This document shows, in pieces, positions 40,573 to 59,182 of a stretch of 64,000 nt of DNA. The notes below the pieces were generated by a model that saw nothing but the letters and a program-made list of their open reading frames with translations, was not told the DNA's origin and searched no databases. Each line of letters starts with the position of its first letter. The first letter of the stretch is position 1. The position numbers and the translations under genes are program-made. This DNA is from Dendrobates tinctorius. Lineage: Eukaryota. The stretch spans positions 13,454,001 through 13,518,000 of the forward strand of contig NW_027361812.1 in assembly GCF_039654945.1 (NCBI RefSeq). Reading direction: 5' to 3'.

Positions 40573-40687
40573 TTATCCTGATGATCCATTACTGGACGGA
40601 TGTTCTTTAGTATGTACCCTTAGTGCCATTTGCTCCAGATTCCTAACTACAGTTCGGCCATCACTCTGCCTTAGCGAATTAGAAGTC
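40573..40687 (-). CDS. FAPP-family gene, probable last coding exon 7
   Basis: ttctgtctcatag| then TSNSLRQSDGRTVVRNLEQMALRVHTKEHPSSNGSSG*. Only the phase-2 frame is open, which fits exon 6. Total predicted CDS 774 nt (257 aa). Confidence 0.45.
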
Positions 40688-42322
40688 CTATGAGACAGAA
40701 GTAACATTTACATCAATTTCTTAGAGACTTCAATTCATCATAGAAAGGATGACTCCAATATGGATGGTATTATTGGACAGTATAGAAAATAGTCCTGTCT
40801 TTTCATGCTCACCTTGGTGGTGTGGACTCAGCGGGCTGACTGAGTGAACGCTTTACCTAATAAAAATGCGCAAATAAAAAAAAAAATATCCATTAATAGG
40901 TTAATAAATTAAGTGGAAAAAAAAGGATAAATTCCTGTATAAGAAACTCAAGCTGCATTTACACTGCGTTACTAGGAATGCTTGTTTCACAGTAATAGGA
41001 CAAGTATACACAACAAAACGTTTGTTCGTTGGGTGAAACGATCATAGTTCTCGGCAGCGCAATGCTCAGTGTAATCCGGACTTGTGCTGCCGAGAACAAT
41101 GGCAGCCTATGCACACTGATCGCTCTATTACAGATCAGTCAGTGCACATCTCATGCCAGGTTTACCTGTGTACACACGCTATGAAACAACCACCGATCAG
41201 CAAACAAGCAGCTGATCAGTGGTTGTCTAGTTCCGTGGTCAGCTGGTGGAAAAGGACTTTTAGTAATTCTAGTATGGGCTAAACCTTATTCTATCTGGTT
41301 TTTGGAGATTACACTTTATAAAACTAGATTTGCAAATATCCCATTGTCAATCGTTAAAAATCATTAAAGGGATAGAATCATGATGTGGGTCAAGATCCTG
41401 AGATATCAAACTGCTGATTTTGGTCAGAAAAGTCACATCCGGCCAAACAGACTGCCCAAGTCAGCAATAACGGATCATAGGGGGCGATCCATATCGGGAG
41501 ATCAAAAATGCAAAAAGGCAAGGGCTGTCAGGCTGGACCACTGCAAGGAAGCTGGCAACGACAAAAACCTCAAAAATAGGACTCAAGTAGAGGTCTAGAG
41601 TACCACTCAGTGGACAATCAGGGGCCTTTCCTCTCTCTGAACCCCTGCAGCAAAGATGTACCTGCAGGTTCTTTATGCCACCTAAAACACTAGTATTAAC
41701 AATGGCGTACAGCAGGAGGGGACACCAGATTTCTTCATTGAGACTCTGGATCTTCATGTTATTGCTTCGTCGCTCATCCATTTAGAAAAAAAAAAAATCA
41801 AGGGGGCAGATTCATCAATGCTTTTATGCCAGTTTTCTTTGAAAGTTGCTAAACATTGGCTTTTCTAAGCCCCATCAAGCGGGAGAATTGAAGGTTTTCA
41901 ACTTCGAGGTCTGATGTGCAGACCAATAACACGAGGAGTACCATGGTGGCAATGTGTCCCAGGCACTGAAGAACTACGTATATAAGACTATGGAGGGAGT
42001 TCATCGGTGGCTTTATGACACTAACGTGGTGAAAAAAATAAAAGATTCTTATTGTGCTATTCTTAAGATTTCTGCTAAAATGTGACTTTCTGCTGCTCTT
42101 AACCCTACAGAGGACTGTCTGGAAAAAGTGTGGATTTACGTGCTAGGGTGAGGAGCCACGAGTGATCCAAACCATGTAGTGCAGATCTACACCTCCTAGC
42201 CTGCCCCTATGGGCGGTGGAGAAAGGGTCAATGTTCTGCTGACTACTTACATCTGCAACCTCTTCTGCTGTCGGTCCTACAACTAGAATATTACCTCTAG
42301 TGTCTTCAGTATTCATCCTCAC

Positions 42323-42360
42323 CCACCACTGACTGGTACAAGCTTACAAATAACGGGTTT
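42323..42360 (-). CDS. FAPP-family gene, probable exon 6
   Basis: tcttctgacctacatag|KPVICKLVPVSG(G)|gtgagg after a 94-nt intron. 38 nt, phase 0-2. Supported by splice signals and phase only. Confidence 0.55.
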
Positions 42361-42454
42361 CTATGTAGGTCAGAAGACTATGGAGACACAAGATGGGCAG
42401 AGAAGGTGTCCGAGTGGAGATATTGTACCACAATTATGTAACGTATAGCCATAC

Positions 42455-42625
42455 CCTTCGACTCTGGGGCAGTTTGGTGCCAACCACATCTCCTGGTAAG
42501 ACTGGCAGAGGAGGGTCTTGCTTATTCAGATGCAGGCTTGTGTTGACGTATGTTATACATTCATCTAATGTAGAACAGATATAAGAACATGTCCCCTGCA
42601 GGTTGGAGCACGCTGTATTAACTTT
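42455..42625 (-). CDS. FAPP-family gene, exon 5
   Basis: Long polypyrimidine tract + ag|KVNTACSNLQGTCSYICSTLDECITYVNTSLHLNKQDPPLPVLPGDVVGTKLPQSRR|gtatgg. Aligns with FAPP1 [24 protein letters not shown]. 171 nt, phase 0-0. Confidence 0.88.
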
Positions 42626-42783
42626 CTAAAAAAGAAGAAAAAAAAAAAAACAATATTCCTAAAGCATTTATACACAGCTCTTACTGTAAACTCTGCAACA
42701 AAAAGAAAATCTTACAATGGCTAAAACATCTAAAGATGGGAATAGCTCTCTAAACGTTATCATCTGTCCATAGGATAACTTAT

Positions 42784-42897
42784 ACAGTACAGACCAAAAG
42801 TTTGGACACACCTTCTCATTCAAAGAGTTTTCTTTATTTTCATGACTATGAAAATTGGAGATACACTCTGAAGGCATCAAAACTATGAATTAACACA
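42784..42897 (+). mobile_element. Isolated Tc1-like TIR fragment
   Basis: TA|CAGTACAGACCAAAAGTTTGGACACACC, truncated. Confidence 0.55.
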
Positions 42898-44288
42898 CTT
42901 TTGATCTGCACTGTACATTCTTGATCGTGGGGAGCAAATCGTTGAAAACCCCCAAAGGTCCTGAGAACAGGGCTGCAGAGCCCCTTCTAACGTACAGCGG
43001 CTGATCACACACACACACACACACATCTCCACTCCACTCATTCTCTGTGGCACTGATGGAGATAGCCAAGTGCCGGACTCGGCTTTTTCCAGGAGTCCCA
43101 TACACAATGAATGGAGCGGTTGTGTGCGTAATCAGCCACTCTAAGTTTAAAAGGGGCTCTGCAGAGTGGACCACCAATCACAAAGGTAATATCTATCCTA
43201 TGGACAAGTGATAACTTCTAAAGTTGGGAATAACCCTTTAACTATGGATCTATCATTTTTGCTTTGTCTGGACAACCCCTTTAGTCTAAGGCCTTTACCT
43301 ATTACACATCCTAGGAATATGTCATTAATGTCTACCATTGGACTAGTCCTTTGAGTCTAGTAAATGCAGATGTTTATTTCCATGGTCCTAATGAGATGAA
43401 TAAAAATAGTGACTCGTACAAAAAAAACCTAATCTCCCAGAACAAGTGTGTATAGTCCAAATACGGTCAGACTAGTAGAGCAGATCCATTTCTAATTGCA
43501 GGGTTACAGATTCCAGCATAGTTTCAGCAGGATTGTGGAAGTTATATTACATTTTCTAATATATGTAATTTTTCTTTTTTGGTGATTCTCCCCAGGTCTT
43601 GAACCCACAACCCTCAACCTCACAGGCAGGAGCTAAAGCTACTGAGCCACAAGCTTTAGTGTCATTTTCTAATATAGGAATGGCAGATTTCAAGTGGTAT
43701 AACCGTAAAGGAACATGAAACACAGAAAAGGCACAAACATCCCACTAAATCCTCCATTAGTCTCAAAATCTTTGATCTGATCTTGTCTTATATTACAATA
43801 AAAACTGGGAAATGAAAACAAAAAATCTCTATCTCAGGAGCTCAACCATGTCCACCCATCCGGACAGTTGTGTGTGGCTGTGAAACAACTTGTTGCAGCA
43901 GGAAGAACCGGGAGAACAAAATAGAGCATGCGGTAACTGACATGTAAAAACATCAATTTTTATTAAGGTAAAGTACTGTGGTTAATACAAAGGTAACACT
44001 GTGCTTGACCAGACAAAAGAGACAGTATCAACCCAGAATACCCCACTCCTCTATCAAGATGGAGCATGAGCCCCAGACTGCATCCCCATGAAGGCCCGTT
44101 TACTGCGCATACAAGTGTAAAAGACATGCACCCAAATGCTAAGTCCAAAGTTGGACATCAAAAGGTGAAAGTGAGACAGGGCGCCAGTGTAATATAGTAC
44201 CGCAGCATAATGCAGTGAGGTAACATAAAAGACAGACCACAGGGGAGCTTACCGGGAGAAGGAGGAGCAGGGGGACCGGGCTATGCCA

Positions 44289-44335
44289 CCCTCGACGCGC
44301 GTTTCGCGGCGCCTCAGGCCGCTTTATCAAGAGGA
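44289..44335 (-). ncRNA. Second, identical hammerhead ribozyme motif (sense to the FAPP pre-mRNA)
   Basis: Exact reverse complement of 45998-46044. Confidence 0.75.
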
Positions 44336-45997
44336 ATCTGGTTAAGGATCCAACCAGGACCTTAAAATAGCCCCTGACCTTGGTCATGTGACCGGGATGG
44401 ACCAATGATGAAGGCGTCAGCGGCGCATGCGCCCCAGCAGGTCCTACAGAGCATAGCGGGCATCATGCACAAAGTGCACACGCGCCGGTACCAAAGTCCG
44501 GGCGCGCGCACAGTGCATATAGATGCCAGCTGCAAAGTGGAGCCGCAGAGTGCAAAGGGCGATGCGCTCGGCCATCAATCATGAAAAGACAGTAAAAGGA
44601 AAGGAGACTAGAAAGATGGTGGATGCAATGCAAAATATTTTAAAAAGACAAAGTAGTACCTAATGCATAGATATAATGCCATGGAAAATACTGTATGTAC
44701 ATATAGACCCATCTAATGGCTGCCAAGTATGAAGAACATAGTGCATAAAAGAGCATACGAATACCATAAGTATACAGTTGGTTACAATATAGCATAAAAG
44801 TACAAGAGTACATAAGGTATAGTGCATATAGCACAGTACATAAATAGTCACCAAGGGCGTACAAGAGACAACAGTATACAGTAATTTTGTAAAAAAAATA
44901 TATACATAAGGCGGTATCCCAAAAAGAAAAAACATATACATGGCAAAGTATTATTATATGAAAAGACAGATGAAGATTGTAGGTACTTGATATGGAGCCA
45001 TTATACTCCTATTTCTAGAAACTTTTTTGGTTCCAGCGATCCTATAAGAGGGTCATTTTCGTGTGGGCACTGCCTGGCTTGCGCCAATGTCCTGCGCTAC
45101 GGATTGCTCTTTTGCATATTTTCGAATTTTGATTAAATGGGTATTTTCCTTTTTTTTGCCTCCACATTCCTGATATCCTCCCATTGGCTCCGTGGCAGCC
45201 TTTTCTGTTTTTAATGGTTTTAGTCTTAATTGTGGCTTTTTCACTGTTATTAATTGCTTTTTCCTCCCCTTTCTTTACTTTAGCCCTTTGCACTTTTTCC
45301 TGGTTTGGCCATTGACGTGATCGTAGGATTGGATTACTACTATCAAGTACGTACAATCTTCATCTGTCTTTTCGTATAATAATACTTTGCCATGTATAGG
45401 TTTTATCTTTTTGGGATACCGCCTTATGTATATATTTTTATACAAAATTACTGTATACTGTTGTCTCTTGTACGCCCTTGGTGACTATTTATGTACTGTG
45501 CTATGTGCACTATGCCTTATGTACTCTTGTACTTTTATACTATATTGTAACCAACTGTATACTTATGGTATTCGTATGCTCTTTTATGCACTATGTTCTT
45601 CATACTTGGCGGCCATTAGATGGATCTATATGTACATATTTTCCATGGCATTATATCTATGCATTAGGTACTACTTTGTCTTTTTAAAATATTTTGCATT
45701 GCATCCACCATCTTTCTAGTCTCCTTTCCTTTTACTGTCTTTTCATGATTGATGGCCGAGCGCATCGCCCTTTGCACCCTGCGGCTCCACTTTGCAGCTG
45801 GCATCTATATGCACTGTGCGCGCGCCCGGACTTTGGTACCGGCGCGTGCGCACTTTGTGCATGATGCCCGCTATGCTCTGTAGGACCTGCGGGGGCTGGG
45901 GCGCATGCGCCGCTGACGCCTTCATCATTGGTCCATCCCGATCACATGACCAAGGTCAGGGGCTATTTTAAGGTCCTGGTTGGATCCTTAACCAGAT

Positions 45998-46044
45998 TCC
46001 TCTTGATAAAGCGGCCTGAGGCGCCGCGAAACGCGCGTCGAGGG
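45998..46044 (+). ncRNA. Minimal type I hammerhead ribozyme motif (U3-A8 variant)
   Basis: UCCUC-UUGAUAA-A-GCGGC cugaggc GCCGC-GAAA-C GCGC G-UC^GAGGG. Stem I is 5 bp (one G-U), stem II 5 bp, stem III 2 bp with a palindromic GCGC loop, and a GUC cleavage triplet. Confidence 0.75.
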
Positions 46045-46869
46045 TGGCATAGCCCGGCCCCCCTGCTCCTCCTTCTCCCGGTAAGCTCCCCTGTGGTCTG
46101 TCTTTTATGTTACCTCACTGCATTATGCTGCCATACTATATTACACTGGCGCCCTCTCTCACTTTCACCTTTTGAAGTCCAACTTTGGACTTAGCATTTG
46201 GGTGCATATCTTTTACACTTGTATGCGCCGTAAACGGGCCTTCATGGGGATGCAGTCTGGGGCTCATGCTCCATCTTGATAGAGGAGTGGGGTATTCTGG
46301 GTTGATACTGTCTCTTTTGTCTGGTCAAGCAGAGTGTTACCTTTGTATTAACTATGGTACTTTACCTTAATAAAAATTGATGTTTTTACATGTCAGTTAG
46401 CGCATGCTCTATTTTGTTCTCCCGGTTCTCCTTGTATATTTTGAGCTTGTGCATTTGGCACTGGTGTTTGGGTTGCTCTTCCCCATCTCCATTACGCCAC
46501 ATTATGATCAAGGGATTTTTGTTGCTAATTATTGTTGCAGCAGGAGCCTCCCCCCAGTGCCCAGGCTGCAGATGCTAAGTCCCACCCCTTACGCTAAAGA
46601 GACAGATTCTGTTGATCACCAGACAAAAATGGCACTGATATGCGGATTAACCCCTTGTGTTTTCTGCAGGTTTCCTGCCAGACCGTCAGTCTGCAGTCTT
46701 TTCGGTATAATACTTCTAAAAATAGTGAACACAACAATATTTTTACTTTAATTTATCCAGTCACTTCTAGGCTTACACTTCAAGACTTATTTTGATTAAT
46801 TTTCCCCTCCAGGAATATTCTCTGTCCGATATGTCACATAGAGTCGAGAGACAACTACTAGTTGGCCGG

Positions 46870-46950
46870 CAGGGCTGTGGAGTCGGAGTCAGAGCCAGTG
46901 TCATGGAAATTGTGGAGTCGGAGGTTTGGCTTACCGACTCCACAGCCCTG
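46870..46950. mobile_element. 81-bp hAT MITE
   Basis: 8-bp TSD TTGGCCGG. TIRs CAGGGCTGTGGAGTCGG / CCGACTCCACAGCCCTG. Confidence 0.88.
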
Positions 46951-47061
46951 TTGGCCGGTAGAGCTGGCAAACAAACATATGACATCCAGCGAGTTTCATA
47001 CATAGGCACAATTACAAAGAAATGTTGATTTTAATACATTATTTTTGTGACAGCTAGGACT

Positions 47062-47378
47062 TAGGGATGAGCGAACGTGCTGGGATAAGGCGTTATCTGA
47101 TCATGCTCGGGTGCTAACCGAGTATCTTCACTTCAGCATGCTTGAAAAATATGTTCGAGTCCCCGCGGCTGCATGTCTCTCGGCTGTTTGACAGCAGCAA
47201 CACACACAGGTATTGGCTGTTAGTCAATCCCTGCATGTGTTGCTGCTGTCAAACAGCCACGAGACATGCAGCCGCGGGGACTCGAACATATTTTTAAAGC
47301 ATGCTGAAGTGAAGATACTCGGTTAGCACACAAGCATGATGAGATAACACCTTATCCCATCACATTCGCTCATCACTG
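47062..47378. mobile_element. Fold-back hAT-type MITE
   Basis: TAGGGATGAGCGAA ... TTCGCTCATCACTG. TSD CTAGGACT/TTAGGACT. ~150-bp complementary arms. Confidence 0.8.
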
Positions 47379-48552
47379 TTAGGACTTCACGTAGTCTAGT
47401 GCATCATATTGAAGCAACCACATATTTATGCCCATCTTACTATATGAGGTTATGCCAAAGACTAAGGGAAGCTCCACCACTGAAATATGCACAGATACTG
47501 TTGAATCTACAAAACGCAACAGTGCCATCTGATAAATGGTGAAAAAAGGATCCAATTTTGTCCATGTCATTTACCCAGGAGTTATTCTCAGCAATTAGGT
47601 TATCTTCAATACCAAAACAGGTGACACCACTAAACCGGTTTGGCTACAATGGTTTTTAATAAAGAACTGTTAGGGTAAAATAACATAGATCACATGGATC
47701 TGTGTAACTGCAGGCAAAAAACAGAGAATAAGCAAATTTGCTCTGCAAAATCAGTCAGCTTGTAGCTGAATCCCCACACAGGGACTCGCCTGTCCCATTA
47801 GCTTCCAGAATAGCTGTAATTTCGGACTTAGAAAAAAATAAAATAAATATAAAATTTGTTTTTGACAAGTGGAATAGTCCAAACATGTGCATCACTGATC
47901 ATTGCAACATGGACATGAGTAAAGATGGATCTCGGAGGCAGATGGACAAAAAATAAAAAGTAGCTTCTCCTCCATCTTCCTCTGTTATCAATGGTCCCCG
48001 CTGATTGGTTACTCTATGTGAGCCTTCCCCTCTTTCACAAATTTATTTATTTAAAAAAAATGCATTTTCTAAATGAATCAATCTTGTAAAGCATACATTT
48101 TTTGCTATATTTTTTATTGCATAAATTAATATTAAATGTAAACATTTACTGTTCATCGTTCTTGCCTGATTTCTGTAAAGATTCACAAATAAAACTGATT
48201 GTTTTTAGTGAATCCAAAAGCAGGAGGAAGGATGGGAGGGATAGGAGGGAGCTGGTGCTGCAGATTCACTACTTCTGTCTGTGGAGGCTCAGATCTCCAT
48301 TTGACCTGTATATGTTCTATCCATTTTTGTTTTTTTTTCCATAAATAGAACTCGCACCCATTATCGTTTATGTGACTGTTCACATATCCATGTTGTATTA
48401 TGGACTGAACATCTGCAAAAACAGAGAAGCAGACACTTGTCCGATTTGATCTGAGCCATGGATCGGCCTTGCGAATGTAAATCTATGGGTCCATGAAAAG
48501 CATTGGGAGGCACAATGATGGCATCCTCGCTGCTTCCTAGTGCAGTTTTTAC

Positions 48553-48689
48553 CTCCGTATTTGGCGCAGCTCCTTCCTCTTCTGTAGTCAATGCTTCCTT
48601 TACTTCTGCCACTTGCCCCATGAGCAGATCACAGAAGAGTCGCAGTTCTGACAGTTTGCGGCTAAGACTTTCATTATCGGGTAGCACAT
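48553..48689 (-). CDS. FAPP-family gene, exon 4 (coiled-coil)
   Basis: tttcctag|DVLPDNESLSRKLSELRLFCDLLMGQVAEVKEALTTEEEGAAPNTE|gtaaaa. Matches the FAPP motif SELRLYCDLL. 137 nt, ends in phase 0. Confidence 0.92.
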
Positions 48690-48705
48690 CTAGGAAAGAT
48701 AGGTA

Positions 48706-49570
48706 GTATTATTATTTATTATTATAGTGCCATTTATTCCATGGCGCTTTACATGTGAGGAGGGGTATACATAATACATACAAGTACAGTAATCTTAAAC
48801 AATACAAGTCACGACTGGTACAGGAGGAGAGAGGACCCTGCCCGCGAGGGCTCACAATCTACAAGGGATGGGTGAGGATACAGTAGGCGAGGGTAGAGCT
48901 GGTCGTGCAGCGGTTTGGTGGATCAGTGGTTACTGCAGGTTGTAGGCTTGTTGGAAGAGGTAGGTCTTCAGGTTCTATTTGAAAGTTTCCATGGTAGGTG
49001 AGAGTCTGATATGTTGTGGTAGAGAGTTCCAGAGTAGGGGGGATGCGCGGGAGAAATCTTGTATGCAATTGTGAGATCTTGTGAGGATCGGAGGTTGCGT
49101 GCAGGTAAGAACCGGGAGACGAGGTCACAGATGTATGGAGGACTCAGGTTGTGGATGGCTTTGTATGCCATGGTTAGGGATTTGAACTGGAGTCTTTGGG
49201 TAATGGGAAGCCAGTGCAGGGATTGACAGAGTTGGAGAGGCCAGGGAATAGCGGGAGGACAGGAGGATTAGTCGAGCAGCAGAGTTTAGAATAGATTGGA
49301 GGGGTGCGAGAATGTTAAAGGGGAGGTCACAGAGCAGGAGGTTGCAGTAGTCAAGGCGGGAGATGATGAGGGCATGCACTAGGGTTTTTGCTGATTCCTG
49401 ATTAAGGAATGTACAGATCTGGGAAATATTTTTGGCAGCGAGCTTGTGGGACTGGGGAGAGTGAGCAGCCATTTACTTTAATAGATAGGTCCATTGGGAA
49501 GGTTGAATGAGATGGTGGAAAGATGATGAATTCTGTTTTGTCCATGTTAAGTTTTAGAAATCGAGCAGAG
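48706..49570 (-). mobile_element. L2 LINE 3' fragment
   Basis: LVHALIISRLDYCNLLL..SAARLI and AYKAIHNLSPPY. The (TAA)n tail ends ~15 bp from the exon 4 acceptor. Confidence 0.85.
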
Positions 49571-49862
49571 GTACAGGATAACTTTCCTAAATTTAAAATA
49601 AAAGTAAAATAAATAACATTTTTAAAGTTCCCTCAATCTGACAAACCCTCCTATGCTAAAATAGCAATGGACGGAATGTGATATAGGACTAGGAAACTCA
49701 GTGTACAGCATTGGCAGAAAAACTCACCCCATCCTGCTGAGGGAATTCATACATAAGGTGAAGTGATTCATCGCAAAGGAAAAGCACACACATATATATG
49801 TGTATAGATTGAGAGAACGGGGTCGTGCCAGAGAGGGAGAGACAGCGGTGGCGCCCGAGAGA

Positions 49863-52609
49863 GACATAGTAACATAGTTATTAAGGTTGAAGGGAGACTT
49901 TAAGTCCATCTAGTTCAACCCATATCCTATCCTAACTTGCCCTAACATGTTGATCCAGAGGAAGGCAAAAAAAACCCATGTGGCAACAAGTAAGCTTCAC
50001 ATTGGGGAAAAAAATTCCTTCCTGACTCCACATACGGCAATCAGACTTGCTCCCTGGATCAACGCAATATTAAGGAAACTAGTGTATATACCCTGTAATA
50101 TTATACTTTTCAAGAAAGGCATCCAGTCCCTTCTTAAATTTTAGTAGGGAATCACTCATTACAACATCATATGGCAGAGAGTTCCATAGTCTCACTGCTC
50201 TTACAGTAAAGAATCCGCGTCTGTGAGTATGCTTAAACCTTCTTTCCTCCAGACGTAGAGGATGCCCCCTTGTCCCCGTCACAGGTCTAAGAGTAAAAAG
50301 ATCATTAGAAAGCTCTTGGTATTGTCCCCGCATATATTTATACATTGTAATAAGATCACCTCTAAGCCTTCGATTCTCCAAACTAAATAACCCCAAGTGT
50401 AATAACCTGTCTTGGTATTGCAGACCCCCTAGTTCCCTAATAACCTTGGTCGCTCTTCTCTGCACCCGCTCCAGGTCAGCTATGTCTTTCTTATACACCG
50501 GAGACCAGAACTGTACACAGTATTCTAAGTGAGGTCGCACTAGTGACTTATATAGAGGTAAAATTATGTTCTCCTCCTGAGCATCTATGCCTCTTTTAAT
50601 GCATCCCATTATTTTATTTGCCTTTGCAGCAGCTGCCTGACACTGGCCGCTAAATGTGAGTTTGTCGTCCACCCATACACCCAGGTCTTTTTCAGTGACT
50701 GTTTTGCCCAGTGTTTTACAATTAAGCACATAATTATACAACTTGTTCGTTCTACCCAAGTGCATGACCTTACATTTATTCCCATTAAAGCTAATTTGCC
50801 ATTTATCAGCCCAAGCTTCTAGTTTACATAAATCCTCCTGTAATATAAAATTGTCCTCCTCTGTATTGATTACCCTGCAGAGTTTATTGTCATCTGCAAA
50901 TATTGAAATTCTACTCTCTATGCCCCCTACAAGGTCATTAATAAATATGTTAAAAAGAAGCGGGCCCAAAACTGACCCCTGTGGTACCCCACTGCTAACC
51001 GTGACCCAGTCTGAGTGTGCTCCATTAATAACCACCCTTTGTTTCCTATCCCTGAGCCAGCTCTTAACCCACCTACACATATTTTCCCCTATCCCCATTG
51101 TTCTCATTTTATGTATCAACCTTTTGTGTGGCACCGTATCAAAAGCTTTTGAAAAGTCCATGTACACCACATCCACTGCATTCCCTTGGTCGAGTCCGGA
51201 ACTTACCTCTTCATAAAAGCTTATCAGATTAGTCTGACAGGAACGGTCCCTTGTAAACCCATGTTGATATTGGGTCATGAGGTTATTCTTCTCCAGATAC
51301 TCCAGTATAGTATCTCTTAGAAAACCCTCCAGGATTTTACCCACAGTTGAGGTTAAACTTACTGGCCTATAATTTCCAAGTTCAGTTTTTGTCCCCTTTT
51401 TGAATATTGGCACCACATTTGCTATACGCCAGTCCTGTGGTACAGACCCTGTTATTATGGAATCTTTAAAGATTAAAAATAATGGTCTATCTATGACTGT
51501 GCTTAATTCCTGCAGTACTCGGGGGTGTATCCCATCCGGGCCCGGGGATTTGTCAATTTTAGTGATTTTTAGACGCCGCCGTACTTCCTGCTGGGTTAAG
51601 CAGGTGACATTTAACAGAGAATTTTTATCCCTGATCATGTTATCCATCATGGGATTTTCTTGTGTAAACACTGTTGAAAAAAAGTCATTTAGCATATTGG
51701 CTTTTTCCTCATCCTCATCCACCATTTCACCCAGACTATCTTTAAGGGGGCCAACACTATCATTTTTTAGTTTCTTACTATTTATGTAGTTAAAGAATAT
51801 TTTGGGATTATTTTTACTTTCTCTGGCAATGAGTCTCTCTGTCTCAATCTTTGCTGTCTTGATTTGCTTTTTACAGAATTTATTTAATCTTCTGTATTTA
51901 GTTAATGCCTCATCACTACCTACTTGCTTTAATTCGCTAAATGCTTTATTTTTGTCCCTTATTGCGCCCCTTACAGCTCTGTTTAGCCATAGTGGTTTCC
52001 TCCTATTTCTCGCATGTTTATTCTCATACGGTATATATTGTGCACAGGTCCTATTCAGGATGCTAATAAACGTCTCCCATTTTCTTTGTGTATTTTTATG
52101 TCTCAGGATATCGTCCCAGTTAATTGCACCAAGATCATCTCTCATCCGTTGGAAATTTGCTTTCCTGAAGTTTAGTGTCCTTGTAACCCCTCTACTACAC
52201 GTCTTATTAAAGGATACATGAAAACTTATTAATTTGTGATCACTGTTACCCAAGTGACCCCCAACCCTTACATTTGATATGCGGTCTGGCCTGTTGGTTA
52301 ATATTAGGTCTAGCAGTGCCGCCCCTCTTGTTGGGTCCTGAACCAGTTGTGAAAGGTAATTGTCTCTCATAGTAGTCAAAAACCCATTACCTTTGCTGGA
52401 ACTGCAGGTTTCTGTTCCCCAATGTATTTCAGGGTAGTTGAAGTCCCCCATAATAATGACTTCTCCTTAAGTCGCAGCTTCATCTATTTGCTTTATGAAG
52501 ATATTCTCTGTTGCTTCCATTATTTTTGGAGACTTATAACAAACCCCTATCAGTAATTTATTATTTTTCCCCCCTCCCCTTATCTCTACCCACAGGGACT
52601 CTACATTTT
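49863..52609 (-). mobile_element. CR1 LINE, 5'-truncated, young
   Basis: TSD CGCCCGAGAGA (49852-49862 and 52610-52620). 3' tail of CTATGTTA repeats. Long open ORF2. Confidence 0.93.
50079..52451 (-). CDS. CR1 ORF2 (partial APE endonuclease + reverse transcriptase), 790 aa open
   Basis: [49 protein letters not shown]. Upstream in-frame TAA near 52468 and 5' truncation make this copy non-autonomous. Confidence 0.9.
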   Translation of the reverse strand: MGDFNYPEIHWGTETCSSSKGNGFLTTMRDNYLSQLVQDPTRGAALLDLILTNRPDRISNVRVGGHLGNSDHKLISFHVSFNKTCSRGVTRTLNFRKANFQRMRDDLGAINWDDILRHKNTQRKWETFISILNRTCAQYIPYENKHARNRRKPLWLNRAVRGAIRDKNKAFSELKQVGSDEALTKYRRLNKFCKKQIKTAKIETERLIARESKNNPKIFFNYINSKKLKNDSVGPLKDSLGEMVDEDEEKANMLNDFFSTVFTQENPMMDNMIRDKNSLLNVTCLTQQEVRRRLKITKIDKSPGPDGIHPRVLQELSTVIDRPLFLIFKDSIITGSVPQDWRIANVVPIFKKGTKTELGNYRPVSLTSTVGKILEGFLRDTILEYLEKNNLMTQYQHGFTRDRSCQTNLISFYEEVSSGLDQGNAVDVVYMDFSKAFDTVPHKRLIHKMRTMGIGENMCRWVKSWLRDRKQRVVINGAHSDWVTVSSGVPQGSVLGPLLFNIFINDLVGGIESRISIFADDNKLCRVINTEEDNFILQEDLCKLEAWADKWQISFNGNKCKVMHLGRTNKLYNYVLNCKTLGKTVTEKDLGVWVDDKLTFSGQCQAAAAKANKIMGCIKRGIDAQEENIILPLYKSLVRPHLEYCVQFWSPVYKKDIADLERVQRRATKVIRELGGLQYQDRLLHLGLFSLENRRLRGDLITMYKYMRGQYQELSNDLFTLRPVTGTRGHPLRLEERRFKHTHRRGFFTVRAVRLWNSLPYDVVMSDSLLKFKKGLDAFLEKYNITGYIH

Positions 52610-53528
52610 CGCCCGAGAGAACGGGAGAGAAAGAGAGAGCGCGAGAAAGGCAGAGAAGTAATACAATGATGGATATGTTGTCTTAGTGGCTGGACAGGTG
52701 TGTTGTCCAGTGACAGAATTTCGGGTCTTCGCTTCGTGTATTTTAATTTGGAGAAGGAGCATGGAAATGGAAATGGTGCGGAATATATGTTGATGTATGT
52801 ATAAGACTTGGTCTGTTTGCCCATAACTTGCTATTTATGATGTACGCTGGATGGATGTTATTCGACCTTCAACTCTCCTATAACATTCAATATAATCAAG
52901 TAGCATGTTTTGGGGGTTTTGGTGGGTGGGGGATTAGGGAGGGCGATGGGGATGCTTTTCGGTATTTCACAGGAAGAAAATATTTTCAATGAAGTTAAAT
53001 TCTACGCCAACAATTTATGAGGGTTCACTTCCTGGGCCCCCCACCAATGCACAGATGTGATGGGGGGGGGTCACAATTTTGGCTTAGTGCCATTTTCTCC
53101 TTATGGCGGTGCTGCACACGGAAAACTTAGAAGGGGATGCGGCTCTACACTAATGCTTCAGCCCATTCATTTTTAGGGTAAATTTAAGGGGGGGGGGGGT
53201 CGCACCAGCTAGCAAAAACTGCTGCAGATCCTATCAGTATGCTGTCACTTTAAAACATGGGAATAAGCCCTGAAGGTTGATACTGTCAGCAATTTCATGA
53301 TCAGCAGCTTGAACCAGTATGTCTGCATTTCCGCACAGAGAGAACCAGTAAGACATGAGATCAGCTGTAGGTCCTGTATGACATAAGTGCAGGTATTCTC
53401 ACTCTGTGTACAGGACCATCCCATGGATGATTGAAAACCTATTCTAGTAAGATCCTGGCCTAAATTCTGATCCACGTAGTGCCGCGCTGACAGTTCTCTT
53501 GGTTATTCTTACAGATAATCCCACTTAC

Positions 53529-53684
53529 CTTTAGAGTTTTGAGTTGCGATGTCTCCCAAACAAGCTTTGGCCGATCCTAAGGCCACCAGCCACCTCTGCC
53601 TGTCGGCCGCACTGTCTGCGCGCAGGTAAAAGCACTGCTCCTTGGGTATATACAGATCCATCCGGCAGCTGTCAGCCTGGTGCA
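53529..53684 (-). CDS. FAPP-family gene, exon 3 (end of PH domain)
   Basis: ccttgcag|[52 protein letters not shown]|gtaagt. 156 nt. Confidence 0.95.
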
Positions 53685-54172
53685 CTGCAAGGAAAGAGAA
53701 TCAGAGCAGAGACACAGAGAAGAGATGGGAGCTATAACATGTGGGGTGACGAGACCAAAGCACCAGATCTATATTTAGGCAATATATTCAGTTTTTACAT
53801 TACATACTTCCCCTGTATAGAGCTTATGGAGGCAAAAATTTGCATTATACATTGTAATCAATAATCTAGATAAATCAAGTGTAACATACCTGCTCAAGTG
53901 CACTTTTACAAATAAATAAGTGTCCAACTTTTTCCCTGCCCTCCATGTAAAACTTCTCAGTATCCACAATAAGCTCCACAGATCAGGAACAGATCAGAAG
54001 TCCGGACTGGGGGTGAATGCACGCCCCAATTACAGCAAACGCATTTGGAGGTCTATGGGTGCCATATGCTGCTACAGGCATGTAGAGTGGCAATCGCTAT
54101 ATAAGTAAGCATCTACTCTATTATTTCTAAACACTGTTTTTCGGTGATTACTTTGTATCTACGTTCATACTG

Positions 54173-54204
<32 letters not shown>

Positions 54205-55083
54205 TGATACACCATTTGAAAGGTAAACCTGCAGAAAGACACAATGACCTGCAGGTGGCACCTCAACCGGAAGACATTTTTTGGCCTCTACTTATCAAAC
54301 TATTTTATTGTATTACCAAGCTACATATATAAATACCTGTCTGTGTTCATCATATCATGAAATACGTTTACATTTGACCAGCTTGCATTTTCTGAAATTG
54401 CCTGTGCCCCTGACGACCAATGTGCGAAAAATTCGCACGGGCCAAGTTAGTAATGATAAATAAGGTTATTGGTATCCTTTTTCCGAATGGGAAAAAAAAA
54501 TCAAAACAAAAAAAAAAAACCCACACAGCTCATACAACCCAAGAAAAATAGTGCATCGTGTGAATGAGATTTTCTATATCTTATTTATCTTGCCGCTATT
54601 ATAAAATGCTGCATTTTTTGTGTGAAAGCAAAGCAGCAAAAACGCTACATGTGAACAAGCGCTTAGAGCTTAATCAATGTTTTTATACCTTTAAGTCATG
54701 TCTGGTTGATATAAAATCAATGGAAAAAACAACTATTCTCAACTGAAGTGAGGACTTGTAAATCTGATGGCTAAAGTGCAGCAAATGCAGGATGTAACAG
54801 GTGGGTTTCAGGTCACAAATCCAGAATATCCCACTACTGGCATGTAGAGAAAGCCACAGTGGGTATACTATAACCGTGAGCATTCAGGGCAGCCGGTCTC
54901 CTCTGCGCCTGGCATCCTCGTCCCTCCATCCTGGGCGCTCCTAGCGCTTCTACATCATAAGGCTGCAGGGCCTACTAGACGTCAGAAGAGCCCAGGCTGG
55001 CAGCAGAGGATGCCAGGAACAGCCCGGCTGCCATGGAAGAGAAGACAGGATCAGTAGTATTCTGTAACAGGAGCACATATTAC

Positions 55084-55200
55084 CTCGGATCTCACACACG
55101 GCCATCTTGATGCTGCCCTTGCTCCCTTTCCCCACATCATCCTGCGAGTCATAGTAGGACAAGATGCCTCCATCCAGCACGAAGTAACGTGGCTGCCAAC
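55084..55200 (-). CDS. FAPP-family gene, exon 2
   Basis: gatcag|[39 protein letters not shown]|gtaata. 117 nt, phase 1-1. Confidence 0.95.
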
Positions 55201-55324
55201 CTGATCACAGGAGAAGACAAGAAGTGGCACATTTCAATAGTGGCAATCAAATAAATATTTCTATCTACTGACAGACAGAGACCAGATCATGGGCAGCTAT
55301 ATGATACCCATATCATCAAGCCAG

Positions 55325-56212
55325 TGGGCAGTATACCATTCAACCAGCAGGCAGTATACCAACCAACCGGCGGGCAGCAAACCATCCAACCGGCAGGCAG
55401 TATACTGTCCAACTGGCGGACAATATACCATCCAACCGGCGGACAGTATACCATCCAACCGGCGGGCAGTATACCGTCCAACTGGCGGACAATATACCAT
55501 CCAACGGGCGGGCAGTATACCGTCCAACTGGCGGACAATATACCATCCAACGGGCGGGCAGTATACCGTCCAACTAGCGGACAATATACCATCCAACCGG
55601 CGGACAGTATACCATCCAACCGGCGGGCAGTATACCGTCCAACTGGCGGACAATATACCATCCAACGGGCGGGCAGTATACCATCCAACTGGCGGACAAT
55701 ATACCATCCAACGGGCGGGCAGTATACCGTCCAACTGGCGGACAATATACCATCCAACCGGCGGACAGTATACCATCCAACCGGCGGGCAGTATACCATC
55801 CAACCGGCGGACAGTATACCATCCAACCGGCGGACAGTATACCATCCAACCGGCGGGCAGTATACCATCCAACCGGCGGGCAGTATACCATCCAACTGGC
55901 GGACAATATACCATCCAACCGGCGGACAATATACCATCCAACCAGCAGACAGTATACCAACCAACCGGCGGGCAGTATACCATCCAACCAGCGGGCAGTA
56001 TACCATCCAACCAGCGGGCAGTATACCATCCAACCGGCGGACAGTATACCATCCAACCGGCGGACAGTATACCATCCAACCAGCGGGCAGTATACCATCC
56101 AACCAGCAAGCAGTATACCATCCAACCGGCGGGCAGTATACCACAGAACCAGCAGGCAATATACGAACCAACCAGCAGGCAGTATACCACCCAACTAGCA
56201 GGCAGTATACCA
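55325..56212. repeat. 23-bp minisatellite (GCAGTATACCATCCAACCGGCGG), about 38 copies
   Basis: Visible tandem array in intron 1 of the FAPP gene. Explains the long stop-free ORFs in several frames. Confidence 0.95.
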
Positions 56213-56360
56213 CCTAGTCATGATTGTGATGTGAATCTACATGATGGATGACACCATCCCTCAGCACCTGCTGGCATAATCCTTCAAGAACATTTTACAA
56301 CGTGGATCCTCTCCGATCACAAGAACAGGGGTGCTAAATGTCCCTTTAGAATGGGCGCAA

Positions 56361-57403
56361 CCTTATTATTATTTATTTATATAGCGCTATTAATTCCATG
56401 GTGCTGTAGATGAGAAGGGGGTTACATACAAAGTTATAGATATCATTACCAGTAAACAAATTTACAATGACAGACTGGTACAGAGGGGCGAAGACCCTGT
56501 CCTTTGTGGACTTACATTCTATGGGATAGTGAGGCAGAGACAGAAGGTCGGGGGTGCAGCCGCTCTGGTGGTGGTGAGGCGGCGGCTCGGGCGGTGGTGA
56601 GGCAGCAGAATGGTTATTGGAGGCTGTAAGCTTTCCTGAAAAGATGGGTTTTCAGGTTCCGTTTGAAGGATCCGAGGGTGGTGGATAATCGGACGTGTTG
56701 AGGCATGGAATTCCAGAGGATGGGGGATAGTCGGGAGAAATCTTGGAGGCGGTTGTGTGAGGAACGAATAAGTGTGGAGGAGAGTAGGAGGTCTTGGGAG
56801 GATTGAAGATTACGTGAGGGAAGATATTGGGAGATTAGTTCAGAGAGATATAGGGAGGGGAAAGGTTGTGGATGGCTTTGTAGGTCAGTGTTAGTAGTTT
56901 GAACTGGATTCGTTGGAGAATTGGGAGCCAGTGAAGGGAGTTGCAGAGGGGAGAGACAGGGGAGTAGCGAGGAGAGAGGTGGATTAGTCGGGCAGCAGAA
57001 TTGAGGACAGACTGGAGTGGTGCAAGAGAGTTAGCAGGGAGGTCACAGAGTGTTGCAGTAGTCAAGGCGGGAGATGATGAGGGCACGTACAAGAGTTTTA
57101 GTAGATTGAGGGCTGAGGAAGGGACGGTTTCTGGGAATATTTTTGAGTTGGAGGCAACAGGAGGTGGCAAGAGATTGGACGTGTGATTTGAAGGACAGGG
57201 CAGAGTTGAGAGTTACTCCAAGGCAGCGGATTTCATGTGCGTGAGAGAGTGTGATGTTATTTACCATAAAAGATAGATCGGATAGGGAAGATACGTGAGA
57301 TGGAGGAAAGATAATGAGTTCAGTTTTGTCTACGTTGAGTTATAGGAAGCGAGAGGTGAAAAAGGAGGATATGGCTTATAGACACTCAGGGATTCTGGAC
57401 AGC
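56361..57403 (-). mobile_element. L2 LINE 3' fragment (same family as 9207-10720)
   Basis: Reverse complement closely parallels ~9700-10720. HWLPILQRIQFKLLTLTYKA; (TAA)n tail. Confidence 0.9.
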
Positions 57404-58346
57404 CTTACAAGGGGTATTCCTATCTCATACAACCCTCTAGGACATATTTTTTGCAAAATGTGCGATTTTAACCACTTGAGTGTCGTAAAATCAGCTTAGG
57501 TAGAAAAAAAGTCAATTTTGGCCTTTGCGCAAAATTCTTGCGTTCATTTATTTTGAGAACTCTGACACGAAAAAAAGTTCAAACACCACAAGTCGAAAAA
57601 TAAAAGTGACTTATAAAAAAAAAAAAGACCATTTTCAACTCTGAGTAAAATTCATGAATACGTGTCGTATTCTGCAAACCTTTATGCGCTAAACGTCCGC
57701 TCATACAGACGACCTGGGTTTGGTCTGAGTGGGGATCGCACTCGCCCCCATGTTATCCAATCAGGCAGCGCGCGTCGGGGCTCGGGGAAAACATCACAGC
57801 GATAATCAGATGACACTCGAACACTGACGTCTATGGATCCGTAGAAAACATAAGAGTGCGGAGCTATTATCATGGACTGACAGAATAAAGAAGATGGGGA
57901 AGCGGAGAAACTTTTTGTTTTTTGACAGATCTTCCTGCGTGTGCACGTACAGATAAGACGCCATGTTTACTCCAGGGTCGACGGACAGAACATCCCCATA
58001 AATCAACAGGCACGGAGAACAGACGGCATTATACGTCATATTACAGTGACCCACAACAGAAATCAGCCATTTACTGATCGGACGCTGTACAACATTGTAC
58101 CCAGACGCTCCTCGCTCTCCCCCACAACATCCTGTCCATCCATGCGGTGGTCCCTGGACTAATAGACACGGTATGAGGAGGCCCACCACAACGCCTCATA
58201 AACTCAGATACTGATGAGAACTTTCTATCATGTCTTTGTGGGAAGTCGCTCTCCTTGTGGAACCAAGATACTGAGATTTACTTCCTGGGAAAAAAATATG
58301 CAAATTAGCTCTCATCCAGAAGGAAGAATGGGAGGCTGTCTCTCTG

Positions 58347-58360
58347 CTGCCACCTAGTGG
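58347..58360 (-). promoter_or_regulatory. CTCF-like core motif in intron 1 of the FAPP-family gene
   Basis: The - strand reads CCACTAGGTGGCAG, which fits the CTCF core CCASYAGRKGGCR. Confidence 0.45.
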
Positions 58361-58618
58361 AGGTAGTCATCTGTGCCATTTTCCTCCTAAATCCTGATTT
58401 GGCCGTAAATAAACGTCAGAAAACCCCTCTCATAGTCTCCCCGCCTTTAGTCACTGGATCGGTATACAGGGGCAATGCTGGAGGAGAGCAATATACTACA
58501 AAGCCTGTGCTGCGCCAACACAGGACTACAAGTCCCAGCATTCCCGGTTTAGTGCTGCACCCAAATAGATGCCTCCGGACACGAGCCACACTGCCCGCGC
58601 CCCGGCTGCTGTACGCAC

Positions 58619-58658
58619 CAGACAAGTAGTTAGTCCATTTCAGCAGAAAACCCTCCAT
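58619..58658 (-). CDS. FAPP-family PH-domain protein (PLEKHA3/PLEKHA8-like), coding exon 1
   Basis: MEGFLLKWTNYLS(G)|gtgcgt matches the FAPP N-terminus MEGVLYKWTNYL[TS]G. 40 nt. An in-frame upstream ATG at 58673 would add MKQLA. Confidence 0.92.
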
Positions 58659-58673
58659 GGCCAGCTGCTTCAT

Positions 58674-59132
58674 TGCCACGCCCACTACCAGAGGAGGGCC
58701 TATCCCTAGGCGAGTTATCTAGGAAGGACCAATGAATGAGAGGAGAGGCGTGGCTTAGCTAAAGGAGAGAAGATTTTCTGTCCTCCTCACCCAATCCATT
58801 TTCGGAGTGGCCGCCGCGTGGATTAGTGGGCGTGTATTTAGGTTACCACGTGACACTCTACACTTTACGTCGGGTCCCTCGCTATAGGCTGCGGCTCTAT
58901 AAGCGTGCGGACTCGGAGTGTACAAAACGTTATGTGATTGGGCGGTTTAGCGGCTGTCGTTTGAACGGTGGCATGCCGGGAAATGTAGTTTTGAACGTGT
59001 AATTCTACGTGTAATTCATGTAGAGTTAGAACTACAACTCCCGGCGAACCATGGTGTTTTTGACTGCATGACCTTCCGGGGCCCTCCTTCCCGCCCCGGC
59101 CATTGTTGCTGGTTAGCGGAGAGCAGGAGGGA
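58674..59132. promoter_or_regulatory. Bidirectional CpG-rich promoter shared by TARBP2 (+) and the FAPP-family gene (-)
   Basis: Divergent start codons ~460 bp apart. ZNF143/THAP11-type ACTACAnnTCCC motifs at 58971-58990 (-) and 59031-59046 (+), with another at 58525-58544. CCAAT boxes (~58729, ~58791, and ATTGG ~58937), E-box CACGTG (~58847), GC-box-like GGGCG motifs. Confidence 0.85.
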
Positions 59133-59182
59133 ATGAGTGAGACCGAGGACTGTGGGAACCAGACGTGCCCCGGGAGTCCCAG
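59133..59182 (+). CDS. TARBP2: TARBP2 (TRBP, RISC-loading dsRNA-binding protein), coding exon 1
   Basis: ATG AGT GAG ACC... encodes MSETEDCGNQTCPGSP(S), similar to the human N-terminus MSEEEQGSGTTTGCGLPS. Ends AG|gtagga (phase 2), which matches the phase of the next exon. Confidence 0.85.

What the first reader, a model, noticed from the sequence alone, without database searches (positions are those of the whole stretch)
40573..58673. A third FAPP paralogue head-to-head with TARBP2, possibly a 2R ohnologue not retained as a coding gene in mammals
Seen in sequence: a spliceable PH + coiled-coil gene with exons of 40/117/156/137 nt and mixed signatures. [20 protein letters not shown] is FAPP1-like, while NYLSG, RMDL and GSAKACL are FAPP2-like. 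It diverges strongly after the PH domain and no GLTP domain was found. K7, R18 and the T9-L12 wedge (PI4P and membrane binding) and E50/H54 (ARF1 contact) are retained. Established from recall: human PLEKHA3 lies near PRKRA (the TARBP2 paralogue) in the HOXD region, PLEKHA8 lies in the HOXA region, and human TARBP2 is head-to-head with MAP3K12 with no FAPP gene between. Inference: this is a HOXC-paralogon FAPP gene, a potentially uncharacterised Golgi PI4P/ARF1 effector.
Basis: partly seen in the sequence, partly recalled or inferred. Interest (0 to 1): 0.7.

Follow-up and report, generated by a model that had tools for sequence, protein, structure and literature searches.

The report
Third FAPP gene beside TARBP2
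This frog window holds an intact, transcribed gene for a third relative of the Golgi adaptors FAPP1 and FAPP2; databases label it "PLEKHA3-like" from sharks to reptiles, I found no mammal or bird copy, and I found no paper that describes it.

Summary
Three more exons complete a 7-exon, 264-aa open reading frame on the minus strand (58673 to 40573). It encodes a FAPP-type PH domain, two conserved helices and a C-terminal motif, with no GLTP domain. Assembled transcript contigs from four studies join exons 1-2-3-4 exactly. dN/dS against Bufo bufo is 0.145.

The protein is 86.5% identical to NCBI's "PLEKHA3-like" of Eleutherodactylus coqui. In ML trees it falls in a well-supported clade (100/95) of sharks, chimaera, ray-fins including two elopomorph teleosts, coelacanth, amphibians and reptiles. 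That clade is sister to true PLEKHA3 (100/95) and separate from PLEKHA8. Related frogs also carry true PLEKHA3 and PLEKHA8.

The gene lies head-to-head with TARBP2, 459 bp between start codons. The same arrangement occurs in toad, turtle and sturgeon. No bird or mammal member appeared in the one search that could show it, and no paper describes the gene.

PI4P residues (K7, R18) and ARF1-site residues (E50, H54) are conserved. The C-terminal motif TVxRNLE[EQ]MA is absent from PLEKHA3 and PLEKHA8 but present in cyclostome and sea-urchin FAPPs.

Verdict: a real, annotated but unstudied paralogue. An origin in the 2R genome duplications is plausible but not proven.

The parts
58619..58673 (-). 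Coding exon 1 (55 nt from the upstream ATG at 58673; the family-conserved Met-Glu-Gly starts at 58658, giving 40 nt). Holds K7 and the WTNYL loop.
   Evidence: Hyloid frog orthologues also start five residues upstream of MEG. RNA contigs continue from exon 2 into this sequence (loose ends).
55084..55200 (-). Coding exon 2, 117 nt, first half of the PH domain (R18, E50).
   Evidence: Covered with 0 mismatches by RNA contigs.
53529..53684 (-). Coding exon 3, 156 nt, second half of the PH domain (H54).
   Evidence: The joint 53684|55084 is seen in four runs.
48553..48689 (-). Coding exon 4, 137 nt, coiled-coil helix (SELRLFCDLL).
   Evidence: Its first bases are the loose end beyond 53529 in RNA contigs.
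42455..42625 (-). Coding exon 5, 171 nt, second conserved helix and proline-rich linker.
   Evidence: tblastn with orthologues; AG/GT sites.
40813..40856 (-). Coding exon 6, 44 nt, basic Ser-rich KRSLSQP motif shared with PLEKHA3.
40573..40687 (-). Coding exon 7, 115 nt including TAA. Carries the clade-specific C-terminal motif TVVRNLEQMALR.
58674..59132 (.). 459-bp divergent (bidirectional) promoter region between the two start codons. GC 0.56 and CpG o/e 0.68 over 58500-59600. Contains a block conserved with Bufo bufo (58923-59215, 80% identity) that holds ACTACAACTCCC.
59133..59182 (+). TARBP2 first coding exon (MSETEDCGNQTCPGSP).
   Evidence: Aligned to the annotated Bufo start.
62817..62986 (+). 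TARBP2 exon encoding dsRBD1.
63769..63871 (+). TARBP2 next exon, end of dsRBD1.

Best explanation
The locus is an intact, expressed seven-exon gene for a 264-aa FAPP-family adaptor. The protein has an N-terminal PI4P/ARF1-type PH domain, a two-helix region shared with FAPP1 and FAPP2, a disordered Ser/Pro linker and a short conserved C-terminal helix motif. It has no glycolipid-transfer (GLTP) domain. It is the hyloid-frog orthologue of an old jawed-vertebrate gene that NCBI calls 'PLEKHA3-like' (called A3L here). A3L is the sister paralogue of PLEKHA3 and arose before sharks and bony vertebrates split. In bony vertebrates it sits head-to-head with TARBP2 on a shared short promoter. I did not find it in birds, mammals or most teleosts. 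These points are shown: gene structure, splicing, purifying selection, clade membership, linkage and conservation of the lipid and ARF1 contact residues. These points are inferred: like FAPP1, it is recruited to the trans-Golgi by coincident binding of PI4P and ARF1-GTP, and it acts as an adaptor rather than a lipid carrier. The A3L-specific tail motif (TVxRNLE[EQ]MA) would then bind a partner that FAPP1 and FAPP2 no longer bind.
For: Gene model with AG/GT at every junction and a 795-nt ORF. Transcript contigs of 736-1108 nt from four studies cover exons 2 and 3 with 0 mismatches. They skip intron 2 exactly (CT..AC on the plus strand) and continue into exon 1 and exon 4 sequence. dN/dS against Bufo bufo is 0.145 (PH domain 0.065), with the same exon pattern. 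The protein is 86.5% identical over its full length to E. coqui 'PLEKHA3-like'. Careful ML tree: A3L 100/95, A3 100/100, A8 100/100, A3+A3L 100/95. Elopomorph teleosts and a pipid frog also fall in A3L. Bufo, Ambystoma, Rhinatrema, Alligator, Latimeria, Callorhinchus and others carry both PLEKHA3 and A3L, and frog PLEKHA8 genes exist. A two-dsRBD gene lies head-to-head in Bufo, Caretta and Acipenser and is adjacent in Callorhinchus. The window's copy is TARBP2. K7, R18 and E50 are invariant in 27/27 A3L proteins and H54 in 24/27. K7A/R18L abolishes PI4P binding and E50A/H54A is the Arf-site mutant of FAPP1 (PMC13472501 and PMC5325608). The AF2 model of the E. coqui orthologue has a confident PH domain and two long helices.
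Against: No experiment on any A3L protein was found, so localisation and partners are inferred from conserved residues only. Position 19 is Tyr throughout A3L where PLEKHA3 and PLEKHA8 have Trp; its effect is unknown. The C-terminal helix has low model confidence (pLDDT about 55). The frog A3L stem branch is long (0.6 changes per site), so some functional drift in frogs is possible. The runs are labelled 'RNA?' by guess, so transcription is inferred from the spliced contigs themselves.
Confidence: 0.85

Rival explanations
1. A3L arose by a small-scale (segmental) duplication of an ancestral PLEKHA3-like gene together with a TARBP2/PRKRA-like neighbour before jawed vertebrates radiated, not by the 2R whole-genome duplications.
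For: The tree only dates the split to between the cyclostome divergence and the crown of jawed vertebrates. Only a few neighbours could be seen within 10-kb flanks. PRKRA next to PLEKHA3 was not shown with tools; Amia shows FKBP-type and gasdermin-domain genes there.
Against: A3L neighbours in shark and sturgeon (a tensin-like gene, a KRAP-domain gene, a C2H2 zinc-finger gene) belong to families that, from recall, have members on human 12q13 and paralogues near 2q31-q35 and 7p14. The topology ((PLEKHA3, A3L), PLEKHA8) matches the commonly favoured ((HoxC, HoxD), (HoxA, HoxB)) relationship (recall).
Confidence: 0.15
2. The gene is simply this frog's PLEKHA3 or PLEKHA8 orthologue, moved next to TARBP2.
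For: Some databases name members of this clade plain 'PLEKHA3' (Pogona, Gastrophryne, Alligator, Latimeria isoforms). The PH domain is most like FAPP1 in PDB.
Against: It is excluded from both clades with full support. Close relatives carry all three genes. The TARBP2 linkage is shared with turtle and sturgeon.
Confidence: 0.01
3. The gene is transcribed but decaying, a relic on its way to the loss seen in mammals and birds.
For: The frog stem branch is long. Frog proteins are about 30 residues shorter than other A3L proteins and use seven rather than eight coding exons.
Against: The ORF is intact, all splice sites are canonical and dN/dS is 0.145. All key residues and the tail motif are retained across 15 or more frog species.
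Confidence: 0.02
4. A3L keeps the FAPP fold but has a different job from Golgi PI4P/ARF1 sensing, for example another membrane or a role tied to its co-regulated neighbour TARBP2.
For: The clade-wide Trp19-to-Tyr change, the distinct tail motif and the conserved shared promoter with TARBP2.
Against: Every residue known to matter for PI4P and ARF1 binding is invariant or nearly so over more than 400 My. A shared promoter does not imply a shared function.
Confidence: 0.15

Closest known systems
PLEKHA3 / FAPP1 (four-phosphate adaptor protein 1)
   Same: About 300-aa architecture without GLTP. PH domain with K7, R18, E50, H54 and the WTNYL loop. SELRLxCDLL and TC..F..TLEEC helices and a KRSxS[HQ]P motif. 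The first six intron positions match. It is the sister clade in the tree.
   Different: Separate clade with full support. Tyr19 instead of Trp19. GDxxT after the PH domain. A different tail: A3L has TVxRNLE[EQ]MA and lacks the PLEKHA3 RRRTYSDTE-type tail. The neighbour is TARBP2, whereas Amia PLEKHA3 lies next to an FKBP-type gene.
PLEKHA8 / FAPP2
   Same: Same PH domain family and helices.
   Different: FAPP2 carries a C-terminal GLTP domain (PF08718 in all hits). The window gene has none. It is the more distant clade.
NCBI 'pleckstrin homology domain-containing family A member 3-like' models (for example Eleutherodactylus coqui, Bufo bufo, Caretta caretta, Callorhinchus milii)
   Same: These are orthologues: 83-87% identity in hyloid frogs, the same exon structure in Bufo, the same TARBP2 linkage and the same tail motif.
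   Different: They are automatic annotations only, inconsistently named (some plain 'PLEKHA3', some 'Sesquipedalian' or 'hypothetical'). No functional or evolutionary description was found.
Cyclostome 'PLEKHA3-like' (Petromyzon, Myxine, Eptatretus) and the single sea-urchin FAPP
   Same: They carry the same tail or linker motif (TVVRDLEEMA in lamprey, RNLEDMAARS in sea urchin).
   Different: The cyclostome genes branch outside jawed-vertebrate PLEKHA3+A3L. The sea-urchin protein still has the GLTP domain length (513 aa).

Membership tests
FAPP family (PLEKHA3/PLEKHA8) | FAPP-type PH domain by sequence | tested here: met
   Exons 2 and 3 hit the human FAPP1 PH domain (PDB 3rcp, 2kcj, 2mdx) at E 1.5e-18 and 3.7e-15. 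The next family, CERT, scores only 1e-3.
FAPP family (PLEKHA3/PLEKHA8) | PI4P-binding residues K7 and R18 | tested here: met
   Present in the window protein and in 27/27 A3L proteins. Their role comes from the K7A/R18L mutant in PMC13472501.
FAPP family (PLEKHA3/PLEKHA8) | ARF1-site residues E50 and H54 | tested here: met
   Present here; E50 in 27/27 and H54 in 24/27 A3L proteins. Their role comes from the E50A/H54A mutant in PMC5325608.
FAPP family (PLEKHA3/PLEKHA8) | Membrane-inserting beta1-beta2 loop (W8-L12) | tested here: met
   WTNYL is invariant in A3L (L12 in 26/27). The wedge function itself is from recall of the FAPP1 NMR work.
FAPP family (PLEKHA3/PLEKHA8) | Conserved post-PH helices and shared intron positions | tested here: met
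   SELRLxCDLL and TC..F..TLEEC are conserved in all three clades. Helices 118-143 and 154-188 have pLDDT above 80. Intron positions near residues 13, 52, 104, 150, 208 and 222 are shared with Amia PLEKHA3 (boundaries from HSP ends, so approximate).
FAPP family (PLEKHA3/PLEKHA8) | Golgi recruitment by PI4P plus ARF1 | not testable with these tools
   Needs cell imaging or liposome binding.
PLEKHA8 / FAPP2 orthologue | C-terminal GLTP domain | tested here: not met
   No GLTP-like exon by tblastn with FAPP2 proteins. The ORF ends at 264 aa. A3L proteins carry PH-family Pfam hits only.
PLEKHA3 / FAPP1 orthologue | Nests within the vertebrate PLEKHA3 clade | tested here: not met
   The PLEKHA3 clade (100/100) excludes it; it lies in A3L (100/95).
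A3L ('PLEKHA3-like') orthologue group | Clade membership, tail motif TVxRNLE[EQ]MA and TARBP2 linkage | tested here: met
   Tree. Motif in 25/27 A3L, 0/24 PLEKHA3 and 0/16 PLEKHA8 proteins. Linkage in Bufo, Caretta, Acipenser and Callorhinchus.
2R ohnologue | Duplication after the invertebrate split and before the crown of jawed vertebrates | tested here: met
   Sharks, ray-fins and lobe-fins occur in both the PLEKHA3 and A3L clades. Invertebrates have one gene (PMC8983885).
2R ohnologue | Location on paralogous Hox-linked segments with paralogous neighbours | tested here: inconclusive
   TARBP2 lies next to A3L (shown). PRKRA near PLEKHA3 and the HoxA/C/D links come from recall only. Amia shows FKBP-type and gasdermin-domain genes beside PLEKHA3, which matches the FKBP7/FKBP14 synteny in PMC8983885.

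The most novel reading that the evidence does not exclude
A3L may be the only jawed-vertebrate FAPP that keeps an ancestral partner-binding motif (TVxRNLE[EQ]MA). The motif is also found in lamprey, hagfish and sea-urchin FAPPs and is missing from both PLEKHA3 and PLEKHA8. If so, the standard models (human, mouse, chicken, zebrafish) lack one ancestral arm of FAPP function at the Golgi, and A3L is the way to find that partner.
Probability: 0.3. Interest if true: 0.6.

Novelty: new member of a known kind. Interest (0 to 1): 0.45.

Why it matters
FAPP1 and FAPP2 are reference PI4P/ARF1 effectors of the trans-Golgi, and the FAPP1 PH domain is a widely used PI4P probe. The one family-wide evolutionary study I found (PMC8983885) describes only two vertebrate groups. 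This work shows a third ancient paralogue that is under purifying selection. It is expressed in frogs and present from sharks to crocodilians. It was not found in mammals or birds, and among teleosts only in two elopomorphs. That corrects the family history: three retained copies, GLTP loss before the PLEKHA3/A3L split, and later losses in several lineages. It gives annotators a rule to separate A3L from PLEKHA3: Tyr19, the tail motif and the TARBP2 neighbour. It also offers a testable new Golgi adaptor with a conserved, unexplained motif. Genes lost in mammals are common, so this is useful rather than startling.

Tried and rejected
The spliced protein has no reference form, so I did not type it into any search tool. 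I searched with exons by reference and handled the spliced product only inside scripts.

The word search cannot see full-length relatives from a 51-aa exon because of its length window. I therefore used the single large representative search with exon 3, then ran the word searches with the full-length proteins it returned.

The look-up of encoding contigs found nothing for five proteins: P0207, P0156, P0191, P0457 and P0218. At least three of them are non-longest isoforms, which that index does not keep. Gar, python and coelacanth A3L synteny, and shark and gar PLEKHA3 synteny, therefore stay unchecked.

PRKRA beside PLEKHA3 could not be shown within the 10-kb flanks.

The search of earlier findings by words returned nothing for PLEKHA3, PLEKHA8, FAPP, GLTP or TARBP2, so this genome's own PLEKHA3 and PLEKHA8 loci remain unconfirmed.

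One paper (PMC6567041) held no residue information.

The AlphaFold model gave no confident structure for the tail motif, and I ran no fold search.

I did not examine mammalian or human DNA for exon relics between TARBP2 and MAP3K12.

Rejected readings: translocated PLEKHA3 (tree), amphibian-specific duplicate (the clade spans sharks to reptiles), pseudogene (dN/dS and splicing), and hidden GLTP exons (transcript length and tblastn).


Full report
**1. What is in the sequence**

- 58658 (or the upstream in-frame ATG at 58673) to 58619
- 55200-55084
- 53684-53529
- 48689-48553

Their lengths are 40 (55)/117/156/137 nt, and every internal junction is AG...GT. Translated by reference, exon 2 is 35/38 identical and exon 3 about 30/46 identical to the human FAPP1 PH domain in PDB (E 1.5e-18 and 3.7e-15). 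The next best family, CERT, is far behind. Pfam sees only a generic PH signal in such short pieces.

**2. Completing the gene**

A full-database profile-free search with exon 3 returned FAPP-like proteins of three sorts. tblastn of those proteins against the window found three further exons:
- 42625-42455 (171 nt)
- 40856-40813 (44 nt)
- 40687-40573 (115 nt, ending in TAA at the finding's start coordinate)

The seven exons give a 795-nt ORF of 264 aa. No GLTP-like exon was found anywhere in the window.

**3. Expression and selection**

About 13-14% of the sampled words of the 1.86-kb stretch 53400-55260 are held by 20 runs. That is the share made up by exons 2 and 3. Four runs from four studies were laid on the stretch. 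Contigs of 736-1108 nt cover both exons with no mismatch and skip 53685-55083 exactly. They continue into sequence that is the reverse complement of exon 1 on one side and of exon 4 on the other. The only intronic coverage is a mismatched repeat at 54110-54450. These are spliced transcripts, although the runs' RNA label is itself only a guess.

Against the annotated Bufo bufo orthologue, whose seven exons I mapped and verified by translation, dN/dS is 0.145. It is 0.065 in the PH domain and 0.20 in the rest, with dS 0.54. The gene is functional.

**4. What it is**

The protein is 86.5% identical over its full length to NCBI's 'PLEKHA3-like' of Eleutherodactylus coqui, and 81-85% identical to those of Leptodactylus, Bufo and Rhinoderma. 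The window therefore comes from a hyloid frog.

A word search with a turtle member listed the same gene in many groups:
- turtles, squamates and crocodilians
- salamanders, a caecilian and about 15 frogs
- coelacanth
- sharks, rays and chimaera
- sturgeon, paddlefish, gar and bichir

It is mostly named 'PLEKHA3-like', sometimes plain 'PLEKHA3', 'Sesquipedalian' or 'hypothetical'. The same species also have true PLEKHA3 and PLEKHA8; Bufo bufo has all three.

A careful ML tree used 75 proteins and 309 columns under LG+C20 with four invertebrate outgroups. Support values are ultrafast bootstrap/SH-aLRT:

| Clade | Support |
|---|---|
| PLEKHA3 | 100/100 |
| PLEKHA8 | 100/100 |
| third clade (A3L, includes the window gene) | 100/95 |
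| PLEKHA3 + A3L as sisters | 100/95 |
| lamprey 'PLEKHA3-like' as sister to PLEKHA3 + A3L | 96/88 |

Within A3L the branching follows the species tree. Adding more rows placed two elopomorph teleosts (Megalops, Albula) and the pipid frog Hymenochirus inside A3L. Hagfish joined lamprey outside PLEKHA3+A3L.

No bird or mammal appeared among the hits that outrank true PLEKHA3, and the only teleost members found were those two elopomorphs. A bird or mammal orthologue should have appeared there. This is absence from one search, not proof of loss.

**5. Linkage**

The window's plus-strand neighbour is TARBP2, with exons at 59133-59182, 62817-62986 and 63769-63871. Its dsRBD1 scores 110 bits to human TARBP2 against 54 to PRKRA. 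The two start codons are 459 bp apart. RNA contigs extend exon 1 to at least about 58755, so the two 5' ends lie less than 0.4 kb apart. A 293-bp block (58923-59215) is 80% identical to the toad.

A two-dsRBD gene of 338-360 aa lies head-to-head with A3L in Bufo, Caretta and Acipenser. In Callorhinchus it lies directly downstream on the same strand. Other A3L neighbours are a tensin-like gene in Callorhinchus and a KRAP-domain gene and a C2H2 zinc-finger gene in sturgeon. Amia PLEKHA3, by contrast, is head-to-head with an FKBP+EF-hand gene followed by a gasdermin-domain gene. That agrees with the FKBP7/FKBP14 synteny reported for PLEKHA3/PLEKHA8 (PMC8983885).

From recall only: human PRKRA-PJVK-FKBP7-PLEKHA3 lie together at 2q31 near HOXD, PLEKHA8-FKBP14 at 7p14 near HOXA, and TARBP2, TNS2, SP1/SP7 and TESPA1 at 12q13 near HOXC. 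If that holds, the three FAPP genes sit on three Hox paralogons, and the tree ((PLEKHA3, A3L), PLEKHA8) mirrors ((HoxD, HoxC), HoxA). This makes a 2R origin the best reading, but I could not test it at chromosome scale.

**6. How it probably works**

All three clades share several features:
- the PH domain
- the SELRLxCDLL helix
- the TC..F..TLEEC helix

PLEKHA3 and A3L also share a basic KRSxS[HQ]P site. Intron positions match those of Amia PLEKHA3.

K7 and R18 are invariant in 27/27 A3L proteins; K7A/R18L destroys PI4P binding of FAPP1 (PMC13472501). E50 is invariant in 27/27 and H54 is present in 24/27; E50A/H54A is the Arf-site mutant (PMC5325608). The WTNYL loop is also invariant.

An AlphaFold model of the E. 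coqui orthologue, built with a 37-sequence alignment, shows the following:
- a confident PH domain (residues 6-103)
- two long helices (118-143 and 154-188, pLDDT above 80)
- a disordered linker
- a weak C-terminal helix (238-254)

The simplest inference is a FAPP1-like coincidence detector of PI4P and ARF1-GTP at the trans-Golgi that acts as an adaptor. The GLTP domain is present in invertebrate FAPPs and in PLEKHA8 and is missing here. It was presumably lost once, before PLEKHA3 and A3L split.

Three things set A3L apart:
- Tyr at position 19, where the other two clades have Trp
- the GD motif after the PH domain
- the tail motif TVxRNLE[EQ]MA

The tail motif is present in 25/27 A3L proteins, 0/24 PLEKHA3 and 0/16 PLEKHA8. 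It is also present in the lamprey and hagfish genes and, as RNLEDMAARS at the equivalent position, in the single sea-urchin FAPP. My own rough estimate, not a tool result, puts a chance match to that core in the invertebrate set at about 1e-3. The motif therefore looks ancestral: kept in A3L and lost in the two paralogues that mammals retain. Its partner is unknown.

**7. Novelty**

Full-text searches found no paper describing this gene. 'PLEKHA3-like' returned nothing, and 'FAPP3', 'plekha3l', 'plekha3a/b' and 'plekha3.2' returned only three unrelated papers. The one evolutionary study of the PLEKHA family states that vertebrates have two groups, Plekha3 and Plekha8 (PMC8983885). The gene is thus annotated by pipelines, and inconsistently, but is undescribed. 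It is a new member of a known family, not a new kind of system.

**8. Limits**

- I could not inspect this genome outside the window.
- I did not look at mammalian or human DNA for relics.
- Several synteny look-ups failed, at least three of them because only the longest isoform of a gene is indexed.
- Localisation, lipid and ARF1 binding, and the role of the tail motif are inferences.

Noticed in passing
window 55326-56212: A 23-bp minisatellite with 38.6 copies at 87% match in intron 1 of the FAPP-like gene. It creates long spurious ORFs in all frames on both strands.
   Followed up: partly
window 50079-52451 (minus strand): A 790-aa open reading frame with an endonuclease remnant and a reverse-transcriptase domain (RVT_1 E 4.5e-35; Exo_endo_phos_2). 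This is a non-LTR retrotransposon in intron 3, in the same orientation as the host gene.
   Followed up: partly
window 43890-46545: A large inverted duplication in intron 4. Mirrored ORFs have identical translations, for example 44523-44663 (+) and 45664-45804 (-).
   Followed up: no
window 25241-26230 (-) and 31817-32857 (+): Two apparently intact Tc1/mariner transposase ORFs of 329 and 346 aa, with HTH_Tnp_Tc3_2 and DDE_3 domains. The first also has a Sleeping-Beauty-type HTH.
   Followed up: partly
window 13295-16289 (minus strand): Retrovirus-like remnants: an integrase C-terminal (MLV IN-like) piece and a gag-like ORF with a RanBP2-type zinc finger.
   Followed up: partly
window 59031-59042: ACTACAACTCCC lies in the shared TARBP2/A3L promoter, inside the block conserved with Bufo bufo. 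From recall it resembles the ZNF143/SBS motif common in bidirectional promoters. A CCAAT-type GTGATTGG is also conserved nearby (about 58936).
   Followed up: no
L002 15286/15287 (Bufo bufo): The toad orthologue's exon 3 donor is GC rather than GT, while the window has GT at the same junction.
   Followed up: no
proteins P0164, P0168, P0191, P0236: Several database records named plain 'PLEKHA3' (Pogona, Alligator, Latimeria isoform, Gastrophryne) rank with the third clade; Alligator and Latimeria were confirmed there by the tree. Conversely, a 'PLEKHA3-like' in sturgeon (P0446) and one in a whale (P0452) look like true PLEKHA3 copies by their 77-80% identity to Ambystoma PLEKHA3. Naming is unreliable for this family.
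   Followed up: partly
L001 (Callorhinchus milii): In the elephant shark the TARBP2-like gene lies downstream of A3L on the same strand rather than head-to-head. This implies a local inversion in one lineage.
   Followed up: no
window 21145-21915: A repeat-rich stretch gives long ORFs in several frames on both strands (a repetitive 'YTSYT/RTPRTH' pattern). It is likely another tandem repeat.
   Followed up: no
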